This document shows positions 11,404 through 60,703 of a stretch of 64,000 nt of DNA, piece by piece (the first letter of the stretch is position 1; each line of letters opens with the position of its first letter). The DNA comes from Macrostomum lignano. Its lineage: Eukaryota. The notes below the pieces were generated by a model. The model saw only the letters and a program-made list of their open reading frames with translations. It had not been told where the DNA came from and did not search any database. The position numbers and the translations under genes are program-made. The stretch lies in NCBI GenBank assembly GCA_002269645.1, contig NIVC01000902.1, positions 1 to 64,000 on the forward strand, written 5' to 3'.

Positions 11404-11494
11404 ATGGCTGCGGCGATCACCCAGATGACCGTCCAGCTGCTGCTGCTGCTCATCCCGGCAGCGCCATTCGCCAGAGTCGCCGGCGCCACAAATG
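11404..11494 (+). CDS. Giant gene exon 1: signal peptide
   Basis: [30 protein letters not shown], then a phase-1 GT donor (G|gtatgg). Confidence 0.75.

Positions 11495-60703: not shown

What the first reader, a model, noticed from the sequence alone, without database searches (positions are those of the whole stretch)
11404..60703. Giant (at least 3,800 aa) secreted mosaic lectin-like protein with an unfamiliar domain architecture
About 47 exons join in phase into: SP-[sushi x4-WSC]x2-WSC-SC-CTL-WSC-unknown-CTL-WSC-SC-CTL-WSC-SC-CTL-WSC-SC-F5/8C-like-WSC(CTL nested)-sushi x10. WSC, C-type lectin and F5/8C folds are established carbohydrate-binding modules, and sushi domains are typical spacers or recognition modules. 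NxS/T sequons are very frequent. I do not recognise a named protein with this layout; it is not SVEP1, polycystin/REJ, selectin or an RCA protein. Inference: a multivalent glycan-binding pattern-recognition, mucus/adhesive or gamete-recognition protein. The ORF track hides it because each exon is short.
Basis: partly seen in the sequence, partly recalled or inferred. Interest (0 to 1): 0.8.

Follow-up and report, generated by a model that had tools for sequence, protein, structure and literature searches.

The report
Giant secreted WSC/lectin/sushi mosaic gene
This stretch holds one very large gene of the flatworm Macrostomum lignano. It encodes a secreted, heavily glycosylated protein of about 3,700 residues built from repeated sushi, WSC and C-type-lectin-like modules; it is real, confined to this lineage and uncharacterised, but made mostly of familiar parts.

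Summary
The observation largely holds. From ATG 11404 to 60328 on the + strand I could chain 46 GT-AG exons (one GC-AG). They give 3,784 aa, or 3,646 aa without a 99.9%-identical internal duplicate. 41 of 45 introns are in phase 1.

- **Independent support:** 15 junctions occur verbatim in public fragment gene models of Macrostomum lignano. A 38%-identical paralogue is colinear over about 1,000 aa.
- **Verified modules:** a signal peptide, 8 WSC domains (8 Cys each), 4 C-type lectin-like domains without the Ca/sugar motifs, and 10 C-terminal sushi domains.
- **Weaker or unsupported modules:** the 8 N-terminal "sushi" modules have weak support. The "SC" module weakly resembles the start of fibrinogen-related domains. 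"F5/8C-like" and the "nested CTL" are not supported by any similarity. U1 is an orphan module conserved in the paralogue.
- **Sequons:** NxS/T sites are enriched, 87 against 32±5 expected.
- **Caveats:** WSC3 carries a 1-nt frameshift as assembled. The U1-to-CTL2 link and the 3' end are unresolved. A tyrosine-recombinase retrotransposon sits between two copies of a duplicated WSC-SC exon pair.

No related protein outside M. lignano was found among 1.84 billion cluster representatives. Glycan binding is an inference, not a shown function. This is an uncharacterised, lineage-restricted mosaic of known domains, of moderate interest.

The parts
11404..11494 (+). Exon 1: start codon and signal peptide ([27 protein letters not shown]...), phase-1 donor
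   Evidence: Identical to the N-terminus of public model P0010. It is the only strongly hydrophobic stretch of the protein.
11845..12126 (+). Exon 2: N-type CCP-like module S1 (about 94 aa, 4 Cys and a Trp)
   Evidence: Junctions are verbatim in P0010. No Pfam hit. Profile A1 gives weak CCP hits. The source names the protein 'Sushi domain-containing protein'.
13664..13948 (+). Exon 3: N-type module S2
   Evidence: Junctions are in P0010, P0001 and P0002. Aligned in A1.
14644..14946 (+). Exon 4: N-type module S3
   Evidence: Junctions are in P0002. Aligned in A1.
15280..15472 (+). Exon 5: module S4, first part (phase-2 donor AA|gtaaga)
   Evidence: The S4a-S4b junction is verbatim in P0002.
15556..15623 (+). 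Exon 6: module S4, second part (supplies the Trp and the fourth Cys)
15702..16064 (+). Exon 7: WSC1
   Evidence: Pfam WSC, E 8.5e-4, profile positions 1-82 of 82. 8 Cys.
16605..16889 (+). Exon 8: N-type module S5
   Evidence: 61% identical to S2. Aligned in A1. Colinear with paralogue P0011.
17180..17458 (+). Exon 9: N-type module S6, with a GC donor (AAG|gcaagg)
   Evidence: Phase 1 is kept only with the GC donor.
21817..22134 (+). Exon 10: N-type module S7
   Evidence: Paralogous to S3.
22589..22781 (+). Exon 11: module S8, first part (phase-2 donor)
   Evidence: The split mirrors S4a/S4b.
22864..22931 (+). Exon 12: module S8, second part
23616..23984 (+). Exon 13: WSC2. The acceptor is the last copy of a 33-nt minisatellite unit.
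   Evidence: Pfam WSC, E 2.5e-4. 8 Cys.
24267..24676 (+). Exon 14: WSC3 plus SC1. As assembled it is broken by a 1-nt frameshift between 24440 and 24459 (frame 1 to frame 0).
   Evidence: The corrected reading gives Pfam WSC at 32 bits, E 1.5e-7, positions 3-82 of 82. Paralogue P0011 is intact here.
25311..25493 (+). Exon 15: CTLD1, N-terminal half
   Evidence: Best PDB hit CD94, E 2.7e-5, and other CTLDs.
26786..27046 (+). Exon 16: CTLD1, C-terminal half
   Evidence: Colinear with P0011.
27932..28249 (+). Exon 17: WSC4
   Evidence: Pfam WSC, E 1.2e-3. 45% identical to P0011. 8 Cys.
28610..29101 (+). Exon 18: U1, an orphan module of about 164 aa
   Evidence: 49% identical to the paralogue. No Pfam or PDB match. 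AlphaFold pLDDT 33. Coding score -4.3 in my model.
31719..32665 (+). Long exon: orphan U2 plus CTLD2. The 5' boundary is uncertain: 31719 (strong acceptor, phase 2), 31721 (GAG, phase 1) or 31982 (weak, phase 1).
   Evidence: Pfam Lectin_C E 1.9e-3 and UL45 C-type-lectin-like E 4.6e-5.
32760..33059 (+). WSC5
   Evidence: Pfam WSC, E 3.5e-8.
33808..33921 (+). SC2: short two-Cys module of about 38 aa
   Evidence: All 14 PDB hits of profile A3 are the N-terminal stretch of fibrinogen-related domains, at E 0.2-0.9.
34787..38768 (+). Intronic retrotransposon encoding RT, RNase H and a tyrosine recombinase (DIRS-like), with an 84-nt internal direct repeat
   Evidence: Pfam RVT_1 4e-13, RT_RNaseH 7e-3, Phage_integrase 2e-3. 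Repeat. Boundaries.
38769..41007 (+). 99.9% identical copy of 32548-34786. It holds the tail of the CTLD2 exon, WSC5' (38981-39280) and SC2' (40029-40142).
41824..42003 (+). CTLD3, N-terminal part
   Evidence: Public model P0012 starts here at 100% identity.
42083..42673 (+). CTLD3 C-terminal part plus WSC6 in one exon
   Evidence: Pfam Lectin_C 2.1e-6 and WSC 2.9e-10. Junctions are in P0012.
42752..42874 (+). SC3
43486..43908 (+). CTLD4
   Evidence: The PDB hits are all CTLDs; the best is rhodocytin beta, E 2.3e-3. No Pfam hit.
44045..44314 (+). WSC7
   Evidence: Pfam WSC, E 1.1e-8. Junctions are in P0012.
45045..45174 (+). SC4 (phase-2 donor)
   Evidence: Junctions are in P0012.
45253..45341 (+).
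   Evidence: Present in P0012. No Pfam or PDB similarity. Weak coding score.
46290..46375 (+). X2
   Evidence: Same as X1.
46492..46645 (+). X3
   Evidence: Same as X1.
46934..47101 (+). WSC8, N-terminal half
   Evidence: WSC8a and WSC8b joined directly give Pfam WSC, E 8.4e-7, positions 1-80 of 82.
47198..47419 (+).
   Evidence: Junctions are in P0012. No CTLD similarity.
49916..50065 (+). Insert exon b inside WSC8
   Evidence: P0012 ends here at 100% identity. No CTLD similarity.
52102..52239 (+). WSC8, C-terminal half
53308..53532 (+). Sushi S9
   Evidence: Pfam Sushi 3.6e-3. Profile A2 of S9-S18 hits complement receptor 1 at 5.8e-41.
53661..53918 (+). Sushi S10
   Evidence: Pfam Sushi 4.2e-6.
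54365..54586 (+). Sushi-like S11 (two Cys only)
   Evidence: Pfam Sushi 0.09. Aligned in A2.
54675..54920 (+). Sushi S12
   Evidence: Pfam Sushi 1e-4.
55183..55401 (+). Sushi-like S13 (two Cys)
   Evidence: A2 alignment. No individual Pfam hit.
55972..56229 (+). Sushi S14
   Evidence: Pfam Sushi 0.057. A2.
56503..56721 (+). Sushi-like S15 (two Cys)
   Evidence: A2 alignment.
56811..57026 (+). Sushi S16
   Evidence: Pfam Sushi 0.05. A2.
57491..57757 (+). Sushi S17
   Evidence: Pfam Sushi 1e-3.
60104..60328 (+). Sushi-like S18, the last solid exon. It has a phase-1 gtaagt donor and no terminal exon was identified.
63270..63348 (+). Signal-peptide exon of the next gene, a tandem paralogue. This bounds the 3' end of the giant gene.
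63772..63998 (+). Exon 2 of the downstream paralogue (N-type module, 'IPCANISID...'). It runs off the window.

Best explanation
[quoted passage not shown] It is the first of at least two tandem paralogues.

**Predicted product.** A secreted, heavily N-glycosylated mosaic protein of about 3,650-3,780 residues with no membrane anchor. Its module order is:
- signal peptide;
- [four ~95-aa CCP-like modules, then WSC], twice;
- WSC, SC hairpin, CTLD, WSC;
- orphan U1, orphan U2, CTLD;
- WSC, SC (this pair is duplicated once);
- CTLD, WSC, SC;
- CTLD, WSC, SC;
- orphan X;
- WSC interrupted by an insert of about 124 aa;
- ten sushi/CCP modules.

**How it was built (shown).** It was assembled by duplicating and shuffling phase-1 exons, mostly one module per exon.

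**Likely mode of action (inferred, not shown).** It is a long extracellular scaffold that displays many weak binding modules: 8 WSC and 4 non-canonical CTLDs, spaced by CCP arrays. It would therefore bind or cross-link polymeric ligands multivalently. The most plausible ligands are glycans or glycoproteins in a secretion or on a surface, such as mucus or glycocalyx, egg or adhesive material, or the reproductive tract.

**What is shown and what is inferred.** Gene structure, secretion signal, sequon enrichment and domain identities are shown. Ligand, tissue and biological role are inferred.
For: **Gene structure**
- A 46-exon in-frame chain with 41 of 45 phase-1 introns and typical donors gtgagt/gtaagt.
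- 15 junctions are verbatim in independent public gene-model fragments.
- Colinear with paralogue P0011 over 1,049 alignment columns at 38% identity.

**Organism:** Macrostomum lignano, from the sources' own names.

**Domains**
- WSC x8 by Pfam, each with 8 Cys.
- CTLD: Pfam for CTL2 and CTL3, PDB for CTL1 and CTL4, and a five-sequence profile against DEC-205 at 3e-29.
- Sushi: the profile of S9-S18 against CR1 at 5.8e-41.

**Secretion and selection**
- An N-terminal signal peptide is the only hydrophobic segment, and 87 sequons stand against 32±5 expected.

**One gene rather than several**
- There is a single signal-peptide exon at the start, and the next one is at 63270.
- Paralogue models stop at the position equivalent to the U1 donor without a stop codon.

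**Context**
- M. lignano is known to make giant secreted mosaic proteins that transcriptomes and annotations fragment (PMC6410801).
- Many small WSC-domain candidate seminal-fluid proteins are reported in this species (PMC5977470 supplement; PMC4490696; PMC6953679).
Against: - No transcript spanning the whole locus could be examined. The public fragments may be evidence-guided predictions rather than cDNAs.
- WSC3 is frameshifted as assembled.
- The U1 to U2/CTLD2 junction has no convincing in-phase solution.
- No terminal exon or stop codon was identified.
- The X exons and U1 score negatively in my coding model.
- None of the CTLDs carries EPN/QPD or WND motifs, so Ca-dependent sugar binding is not expected from them.
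- WSC ligand data come from fungal proteins (my own knowledge), not from animals.
- No expression or localisation data could be linked to this gene.
Confidence: 0.6

Rival explanations
1. The locus holds two or more adjacent genes of the same family rather than one. For example, gene A would run from the signal peptide to U1 (about 1,590 aa). Gene B would start near ATG 31690 and run from U2-CTLD2 to the sushi array.
For: - There is a 2.6-2.9 kb gap (29102-31718/31981) with no convincing exon.
- The best acceptor of the next exon (31719, score 5.1) is in phase 2 and cannot take the phase-1 donor of U1.
- An ATG at 31690 opens a 331-aa ORF through that exon.
- All public models are fragments that never bridge this gap.
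- The family is tandemly duplicated here anyway.
Against: - The peptide after ATG 31690 ([17 protein letters not shown]...) is a poor signal peptide. By my reading of the sequence its hydrophobic core is short and broken by charged residues.
- U1 ends at a good gtaagt donor (score 5.1) rather than at a stop. The paralogue's models also end there without a stop.
- In-phase acceptors exist at 31982 and 31721.
- Gaps of 2-5 kb are ordinary introns in this gene.
Confidence: 0.2
2. This copy is a decaying or non-functional member of the family. The frameshift in WSC3 would truncate the protein after about 1,130 aa. The retrotransposon-associated duplication is further damage.
For: - A frame 1 to frame 0 shift lies between 24440 and 24459, with a stop at 24542 in the original frame.
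- A DIRS-like element is flanked by a 2.2-kb duplicate that includes a truncated exon.
- A frameshifted LRR pseudogene-like sequence lies nearby.
- M. lignano carries many recent duplicates (my own knowledge), so redundancy is plausible.
Against: - About 2,600 residues downstream of the frameshift keep open frames, the 8-Cys WSC pattern, splice sites and sequon enrichment.
- The neighbouring nucleotide-sugar transporter gene is intact, so the frameshift may be a single assembly indel or a very recent allele.
- A 95-nt in-frame splice (24445/24541), in the size range of this gene's small introns, would bypass it.
- The transposon and the duplicate lie in an intron, and the duplicated exons are phase 1, so they are tolerated in frame.
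Confidence: 0.15
3. The protein is real, but it works through protein-protein contacts rather than as a lectin. Examples would be a matrix or cuticle-like scaffold, or a complement-control-like regulator.
For: - No CTLD has the Ca/sugar motifs. The nearest solved relatives of CTL1 and CTL4 are NK-receptor and snake-venom CTLDs, which bind proteins.
- The 18 CCP-type modules are classic protein-binding units.
- The SC module resembles a structural hairpin of fibrinogen-related domains, not their binding site.
Against: - Eight WSC domains dominate the middle of the protein. Where tested, in fungal proteins, WSC binds polysaccharides (my own knowledge).
- The two modes are not mutually exclusive.
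Confidence: 0.3
4. It is a reproductive protein, made by prostate, antrum or shell and cement glands. It would belong to the rapidly evolving WSC-rich reproductive secretome of Macrostomum.
For: - Many prostate-limited candidate seminal-fluid transcripts of M. lignano carry WSC domains or fibrinogen-related domains (PMC5977470 supplementary table; PMC4490696; PMC6953679).
- The family is restricted to this lineage: only M. lignano family hits among 1.84 billion cluster representatives. That fits fast-evolving reproductive genes.
Against: - The reported candidates are small (0.3-1.4 kb transcripts), and none could be linked to this locus. RNA815_80.4 is a different, 969-nt transcript.
- No expression data for this gene were accessible.
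- Lineage restriction is equally typical of immune and mucus genes.
Confidence: 0.15

Closest known systems
Macrostomum lignano uncharacterised proteins A0A1I8I396 / A0A1I8IUM8 / A0A1I8JQ75 ('Sushi domain-containing protein') and A0A1I8IWD3 ('WSC domain-containing protein')
   Same: These are fragment models of this very locus or its near-identical copy. They are 99-100% identical to exons 1-3, exons 1-7 and CTLD3..insert-b, with the same splice junctions.
   Different: They are 212-779 aa fragments, some with internal frameshifts. None shows the full ~3,700-aa architecture, and none is characterised.
M. lignano paralogue A0A1I8JHH6 (1,021 aa) / A0A1I8H2P9 (824 aa), 'WSC domain-containing protein'
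   Same: It has the same module order: four CCP-like modules, WSC, WSC, SC, CTLD, WSC, U1. It is 38% identical over about 1,000 aa, and 49% in U1.
   Different: It is a different locus and a partial model. The shorter model joins the first CTLD exon directly to U1, skipping the second CTLD exon and the WSC exon. Its WSC3 is intact.
Polycystin-1 / sea-urchin REJ family
   Same: An animal extracellular region that combines a WSC domain with a C-type lectin domain (my own knowledge).
   Different: This gene has no LRR, PKD repeats, REJ/GAIN module or transmembrane segments. Nothing but the signal peptide is hydrophobic. Pfam found only WSC, Lectin_C and Sushi.
Mannose receptor family (MRC1, DEC-205/LY75, PLA2R)
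   Same: Several CTLDs sit in tandem on one chain. These are the best PDB matches of the CTLD profile.
   Different: Those are type I membrane receptors with ricin-B and FnII domains and 8-10 contiguous CTLDs. Here there are 4 CTLDs, each alternating with WSC, and no membrane anchor.
CSMD / SVEP1 / complement-control proteins
   Same: Long arrays of sushi/CCP modules encoded by phase-1 exons. CR1, CR2 and factor H are the top matches of the C-terminal array. A CSMD3-like protein is a weak hit of the N-type profile.
   Different: This gene has no CUB, vWA, EGF or pentraxin domains. Half of the C-terminal modules keep only two of the four cysteines.
Mlig-ap1 / Mlig-ap2 (M. lignano adhesive proteins)
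   Same: Same species. They are giant (5,407 and 14,794 aa) secreted mosaic proteins that were split over many transcripts before manual curation. Mlig-ap1 has one C-type lectin domain (PMC6410801).
   Different: Those are built from K/R-rich repeats and vWD, C8, TIL, EGF, TSP-1 and LDL domains. WSC and sushi are not reported for them. The present protein is acidic overall (283 K+R against 365 D+E).

Membership tests
WSC domain (PF01822) | Match to the family profile over its full length | tested here: met
   All 8 modules hit Pfam WSC at E 1.2e-3 to 2.9e-10. WSC3, 5, 6, 7 and 8 score above the gathering score of 27.8 bits; WSC1, 2 and 4 score 19-22 bits, below it.
WSC domain (PF01822) | Eight conserved cysteines | tested here: met
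   Exactly 8 Cys in each of the 8 modules. For WSC3 this holds only after the frameshift correction, and for WSC8 only after joining its two halves.
WSC domain (PF01822) | Carbohydrate binding | not testable with these tools
   This needs recombinant protein and glycan or polysaccharide binding assays.
[quoted passage not shown] | Sequence similarity to CTLDs | tested here: met
   - CTL3: Pfam 2.1e-6, above cut-off.
- CTL2: Pfam 1.9e-3.
- CTL1: CD94 at 2.7e-5.
- CTL4: only CTLD hits, best 2.3e-3.
- Five-sequence profile: DEC-205 at 3e-29.
- The fifth module, the 'nested CTL5', has no CTLD hit.
C-type lectin (Ca-dependent carbohydrate-recognition domain) | EPN or QPD tripeptide plus WND motif that ligate Ca2+ and sugar | tested here: not met
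   No EPN, QPD, [EQ]P[ND], WND or W[NS]D in any of the five modules. They should therefore be called CTLDs, not C-type lectins.
Sushi / CCP / SCR (PF00084): C-terminal array S9-S18 | Profile similarity to CCP modules | tested here: met
   The profile of the ten modules hits CR1 at 5.8e-41, CR2, factor H, CD46 and others. Individually, S10 scores 4.2e-6, S12 1e-4, S17 1e-3 and S9 3.6e-3. S11, S14 and S16 score 0.05-0.09. S13, S15 and S18 have no individual hit.
Sushi / CCP / SCR (PF00084): C-terminal array S9-S18 | Four cysteines (C1-C3 and C2-C4 disulfides) and a conserved Trp | tested here: inconclusive
   Trp is nearly invariant. S9, S10, S12, S14, S16 and S17 have four Cys. S11, S13, S15 and S18 keep only the C1 and C3 positions.
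Sushi / CCP / SCR: N-terminal modules S1-S8 | Profile similarity to CCP modules | tested here: inconclusive
   - No Pfam hit at E < 1.
- The best PDB hit of profile A1 is a MASP-1 CCP at E 0.009.
- hhalign against the C-terminal array gives probability 19%.
- Library hits beyond the family include a 4x sushi protein (3.5e-7) and a CSMD3-like protein (3.8e-5), but also unrelated repeat proteins.
- UniProt names the fragments 'Sushi domain-containing'.
- They have four Cys and a Trp but are about 95 aa long.
- AlphaFold pLDDT was 56 and the fold search was meaningless.
Coagulation factor 5/8 C-terminal (discoidin) domain | Profile similarity | tested here: not met
   The unspliced ORF segments covering X1-X3 (45185-45385, 45400-45549, 46283-46707) gave no Pfam hit. 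P0012, which contains the spliced X1-X3, carries only Lectin_C and WSC in its precomputed Pfam list. The joined SC4+X1-X3 gave no PDB hit.
Fibrinogen-related domain (for the 'SC' module) | Complete domain of about 220 aa with A, B and P subdomains | tested here: not met
   The module is only 37-45 aa. It aligns, at E 0.2-0.9, only with the first ~35 residues of FGL1, fibrinogen beta and angiopoietin-1 domains. No Pfam hit. This is a resemblance, not membership.
Polycystin-1 / REJ family | REJ/GAIN module, PKD repeats and polycystin transmembrane region | tested here: not met
   None was found by Pfam in any module. There is no hydrophobic segment apart from the signal peptide.
DIRS-like tyrosine-recombinase retrotransposon (the intronic insertion) | Reverse transcriptase and RNase H together with a tyrosine recombinase instead of a DDE integrase | tested here: met
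   RVT_1 4.1e-13, RT_RNaseH 7.4e-3 and Phage_integrase 2e-3 on consecutive ORFs at 35557-38192.

The most novel reading that the evidence does not exclude
The protein is a lineage-specific reproductive or surface 'glycan-net' scaffold of Macrostomum that co-evolves with the many small WSC-domain seminal-fluid proteins of this genus. It might be their receptor, their competitor or a matrix partner. It would also carry at least two module types with new folds: the ~95-aa four-Cys N-type module and the conserved orphan U1.
Probability: 0.12. Interest if true: 0.6.

Novelty: new variant of a known kind. Interest (0 to 1): 0.33.

Why it matters
If the model is right, M. lignano has another giant secreted protein that current annotation shows only as unconnected fragments. 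The same was true of its adhesive proteins before manual curation.

Alternating WSC and CTLD modules capped by sushi arrays is not a described architecture. Animal WSC domains have no established ligand. WSC-domain proteins are prominent among this worm's candidate seminal-fluid proteins.

A tractable model with RNAi, in situ hybridisation and transgenesis could therefore give the first functional handle on metazoan WSC domains.

The locus also shows how such genes grow: phase-1 exon shuffling, tandem gene duplication, and a very recent in-frame exon-pair duplication associated with a tyrosine-recombinase retrotransposon.

Beyond that, it is one more lineage-specific mosaic of familiar extracellular modules, which are common in invertebrate genomes.

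Tried and rejected
1. **Whole-protein word-indexed search.** The 3,307-aa draft found nothing, although 100%-identical fragments exist. Shorter queries later recovered P0003 and P0012. The first negative was a sensitivity artefact, not evidence of absence.
2. **Spliced sequences in restricted tools.** The exhaustive search and the structure predictor refuse spliced proteins. Only single-exon translations and their alignments could be used.
3. **AlphaFold.** The N-type module gave pLDDT 56 and U1 gave pLDDT 33. The fold search on the first returned only noise. No fold assignment was made from these.
4. **U1 as an alternative C-terminal half of a CTLD.** One paralogue model suggested this by splicing the first CTLD exon straight to U1. 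hhalign against the CTLD profile gave probability 0.06%, so I rejected it.
5. **Generic human-like splice matrices.** They mis-scored acceptors. I retrained them on confident sites and allowed GC donors.
6. **My dynamic-programming gene finder.** It is unstable in 28.2-31.7 kb and 45-46.7 kb. Its tiny exons there (3 nt, 34 nt, 39 nt, 43 nt) were discarded.
7. **RNA815_80.4.** This prostate transcript with two WSC domains is a different, 969-nt mRNA.
8. **Rfam and tRNA scans** of the window were empty.
9. **Literature.** Searches for the UniProt accessions and for WSC in flatworms gave nothing on this gene.
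Full report
**What the window is**

The window is eukaryotic, with short GC-rich exons separated by introns full of minisatellites. [quoted passage not shown] No Rfam family or tRNA is present.

**Checking the observation**

I listed stop-free segments on the + strand. I then trained a small codon-position Markov model on the obvious cysteine-rich segments. A dynamic-programming exon chainer followed, first with generic and then with retrained splice matrices and GC donors allowed. 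After hand curation of the unstable places the final model has these properties:
- 46 exons from ATG 11404 to 60328;
- 3,784 aa, or 3,646 aa without an internal duplicate;
- no in-frame stop;
- all introns GT-AG except one GC-AG at 17458;
- introns of 78 to 5,059 nt;
- 41 of 45 introns in phase 1.

**Independent support for the model**

An exhaustive profile search used the N-terminal module alignment against 1.84 billion cluster representatives. It returned only nine proteins at E of 0.001 or better. The top three are M. lignano proteins.
- P0010 (A0A1I8I396) is 100% identical to my exons 1-3, including both junctions.
- P0002 covers the 5'UTR to WSC1.
- A later search recovered P0012 (A0A1I8IWD3, 779 aa). 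It is 100% identical to the stretch from CTLD3 to the second insert exon of WSC8. It contains exactly the weak exons that my first run had proposed at 45045-46645.

Altogether 15 of 45 junctions occur verbatim in these public fragments. The paralogue P0011 (A0A1I8JHH6, 1,021 aa) aligns colinearly with my residues 556-1574 at 38% identity. That supports the order S5-S8, WSC2, WSC3, SC1, CTLD1, WSC4, U1. These public models may be evidence-guided predictions rather than cDNAs, so they are support, not proof.

1. *WSC3 is frameshifted as assembled.* The N-terminal half of the domain is in frame 1 up to about 24445. The C-terminal half and the following SC module are in frame 0 from about 24448.
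   - With one inserted base the module scores 32 bits against Pfam WSC over positions 3-82 of 82.
   - The paralogue is intact here.
   - The frameshift is therefore an assembly indel, a very recent mutation, or is bypassed by a 95-nt splice (24445/24541) that deletes half the domain.
2. *One WSC-SC pair is a duplicate.* Positions 32548-34786 and 38769-41007 differ only at the first few bases.
   - The copies flank a 3,982-bp element encoding RT, RNase H and a tyrosine recombinase. The element has an 84-nt direct repeat at its right end.
   - The second copy starts inside the CTLD2 exon, so it carries a truncated exon followed by complete WSC5' and SC2' exons.
   - These exons are phase 1, so including or skipping them keeps the frame.
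3. *The U1 to CTLD2 link is unresolved.* The U1 donor (29101, gtaagt) is in phase 1, but the best acceptor of the long CTLD2 exon (31719) is in phase 2.
   - In-phase alternatives are a GAG acceptor at 31721 and a weak one at 31982.
   - No bridging exon is convincing.
4. *The 3' end is unknown.* S18 ends at a good donor (60328). Read-through runs into (GTCT)n. The best candidate terminal exon is only 5 nt long.
   - A new signal-peptide exon at 63270-63348 and an N-type module exon from 63772 mark the start of a tandem paralogue. The giant gene must therefore end before about 63.2 kb.

**Domain identities**

- *WSC.* All eight modules hit Pfam WSC at E 1.2e-3 to 2.9e-10, and each has exactly eight cysteines. 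The two halves of WSC8, which lie 5 kb apart, make a complete domain when joined directly.
- *The insert in WSC8.* The two exons between the halves (47198-47419 and 49916-50065) are included in P0012. They have no similarity to CTLDs or to anything else. The 'nested CTL' is therefore an insert of unknown fold.
- *CTLDs.* Four are supported:
  - CTL3 by Pfam, 2.1e-6;
  - CTL2 by Pfam, 1.9e-3;
  - CTL1 by CD94, 2.7e-5;
  - CTL4 by snake-venom CTLDs, 2.3e-3.

  A five-sequence profile hits DEC-205 at 3e-29. None has EPN/QPD or WND, so they are not canonical Ca-dependent lectins.
- *C-terminal sushi array.* The ten modules are sushi/CCP as a family, hitting CR1 at 5.8e-41. Four of them keep only two cysteines.
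- *N-terminal 'sushi' modules.* The eight modules are about 95 aa long, with four Cys and a Trp.
  - They get no Pfam hit and only weak CCP signals.
  - UniProt nevertheless names the fragments 'Sushi domain-containing'.
  - AlphaFold gave pLDDT 56 and the fold search gave noise.
  - I call them CCP-like, unproven.
- *SC modules.* These four modules of 37-45 aa have two Cys. They match only the first ~35 residues of fibrinogen-related domains, at non-significant E-values.
- *Orphan modules.* U1, U2 and X1-X3 have no detectable relatives in Pfam or the PDB.
  - U1 is the best-conserved part between the paralogues, at 49% identity.
  - AlphaFold on U1 failed, with pLDDT 33.
  - 'F5/8C-like' is not supported.

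**Secretion and selection**

The only hydrophobic 19-mer windows are at the N-terminus. NxS/T sequons are 2.7-fold enriched, 87 against 32±5.2 in 500 shuffles. This is hard to explain unless the reading frame is real and the product passes through the secretory pathway. The protein is acidic (283 K+R against 365 D+E) and 4.8% Cys.

**How it most likely works**

The following are shown:
- a signal peptide and no membrane anchor;
- many sequons;
- modular phase-1 exons;
- WSC, CTLD and CCP families.

The following is inferred: a long extracellular scaffold presents many low-affinity binding modules and binds or cross-links polymeric ligands multivalently. WSC domains bind polysaccharides in the fungal proteins where they have been tested (my own knowledge), so glycans or glycoproteins are the most plausible ligands. 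The non-canonical CTLDs and the CCP arrays could equally mediate protein contacts.

Tissue and role are unknown. In M. lignano many prostate-limited candidate seminal-fluid transcripts are small WSC-domain or fibrinogen-related proteins (PMC5977470 supplement; PMC4490696; PMC6953679). This makes a reproductive role a lead, but nothing links this locus to those data, and RNA815_80.4 is a different transcript.

**Comparison with what is known**

- It is not polycystin/REJ: there are no PKD repeats, REJ/GAIN module or transmembrane region.
- It is not a mannose-receptor-type protein: there is no membrane anchor, ricin-B or FnII domain.
- It is not CSMD or SVEP1: there are no CUB, vWA or EGF domains.
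- The only related proteins found are uncharacterised M. lignano fragments and one paralogue. No open-access paper mentions their accessions.

**Verdict**

Three things must be subtracted: the 'F5/8C' label, the 'nested CTL' label and the certainty about the N-terminal sushi modules. Four caveats must be added: a frameshift, a transposon-associated duplicate, an unresolved middle junction and an unknown 3' end.

It is a new variant of a familiar kind, a lineage-specific secreted mosaic of adhesion and lectin-type modules. It is already partly present in databases as fragments. Interest is moderate.

Noticed in passing
window 1-1065 (+): Leucine-rich-repeat coding sequence (SHOC2-like by eye) whose reading frame hops between all three frames every 20-40 codons, without introns. 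It looks like a frameshifted retrocopy or pseudogene. Pfam LRR hits occur in three different frames.
   Followed up: partly
window 5571-7460 (+): An intact nucleotide-sugar transporter gene (Pfam Nuc_sug_transp positions 20-315 of 315) spread over four exons. Minisatellites lie in and around its introns. This shows that local assembly quality is good.
   Followed up: partly
window 34787-38768 (+), with flanks 32548-34786 and 38769-41007: A DIRS-like tyrosine-recombinase retrotransposon lies between two 99.9%-identical 2.2-kb copies of host sequence. The second copy begins inside an exon, at a 'TACT' microhomology with the element's end. This would fit unequal recombination between two insertions of the element, or a haplotype mis-join.
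   Followed up: partly
window 63270-63998 (+): Start of a tandem paralogue: a signal-peptide exon (63270-63348, phase-1 gtaaac donor) and an N-type module exon from 63772. It has the same exon-intron layout as the start of the giant gene.
   Followed up: partly
window 17548-21740, 47543-49656, 50136-51920; also 12135-13055, 42891-43449, 44340-45036, 60338-60594: Very large intronic minisatellite and microsatellite arrays with units of 12, 10, 66, 16, 16, 4 and 4 nt. The 12-mer array shows extreme GC skew (+0.65). Several are stop-free in all frames and mimic long ORFs.
   Followed up: no
window 23305-23628: A 33-nt minisatellite whose unit contains the sequence 'ccgcagACCAGTCC'. This is the acceptor and first codons of the WSC2 exon, so the true acceptor (23616) is the last of about ten repeated copies. 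It could be a source of alternative or cryptic splicing.
   Followed up: no
window 17458/17459: A GC-AG intron (AAG|gcaagg) is needed to keep module S6 complete and in phase.
   Followed up: partly
paralogue proteins P0003 vs P0011 (no window coordinates; equivalent to window 26786-28249): Two public models of the paralogue differ only by the presence or absence of the second CTLD exon plus the WSC exon. This suggests exon skipping of phase-1 modules, or two near-identical loci.
   Followed up: no
window 1789-2999, 4601-5495, 6032-6646, 7599-8603, 9406-9936: A series of tandem-repeat arrays (units of 41, 31, 20, 62 and 44 nt) lies upstream of the giant gene, some inside or beside the transporter gene.
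   Followed up: no
tool behaviour, vs 73/74: The word-indexed protein search returned nothing for the 3,307-aa query. It did find 100%-identical database entries when given ~1,000-aa pieces. Negative results from very long queries should not be trusted.
   Followed up: yes
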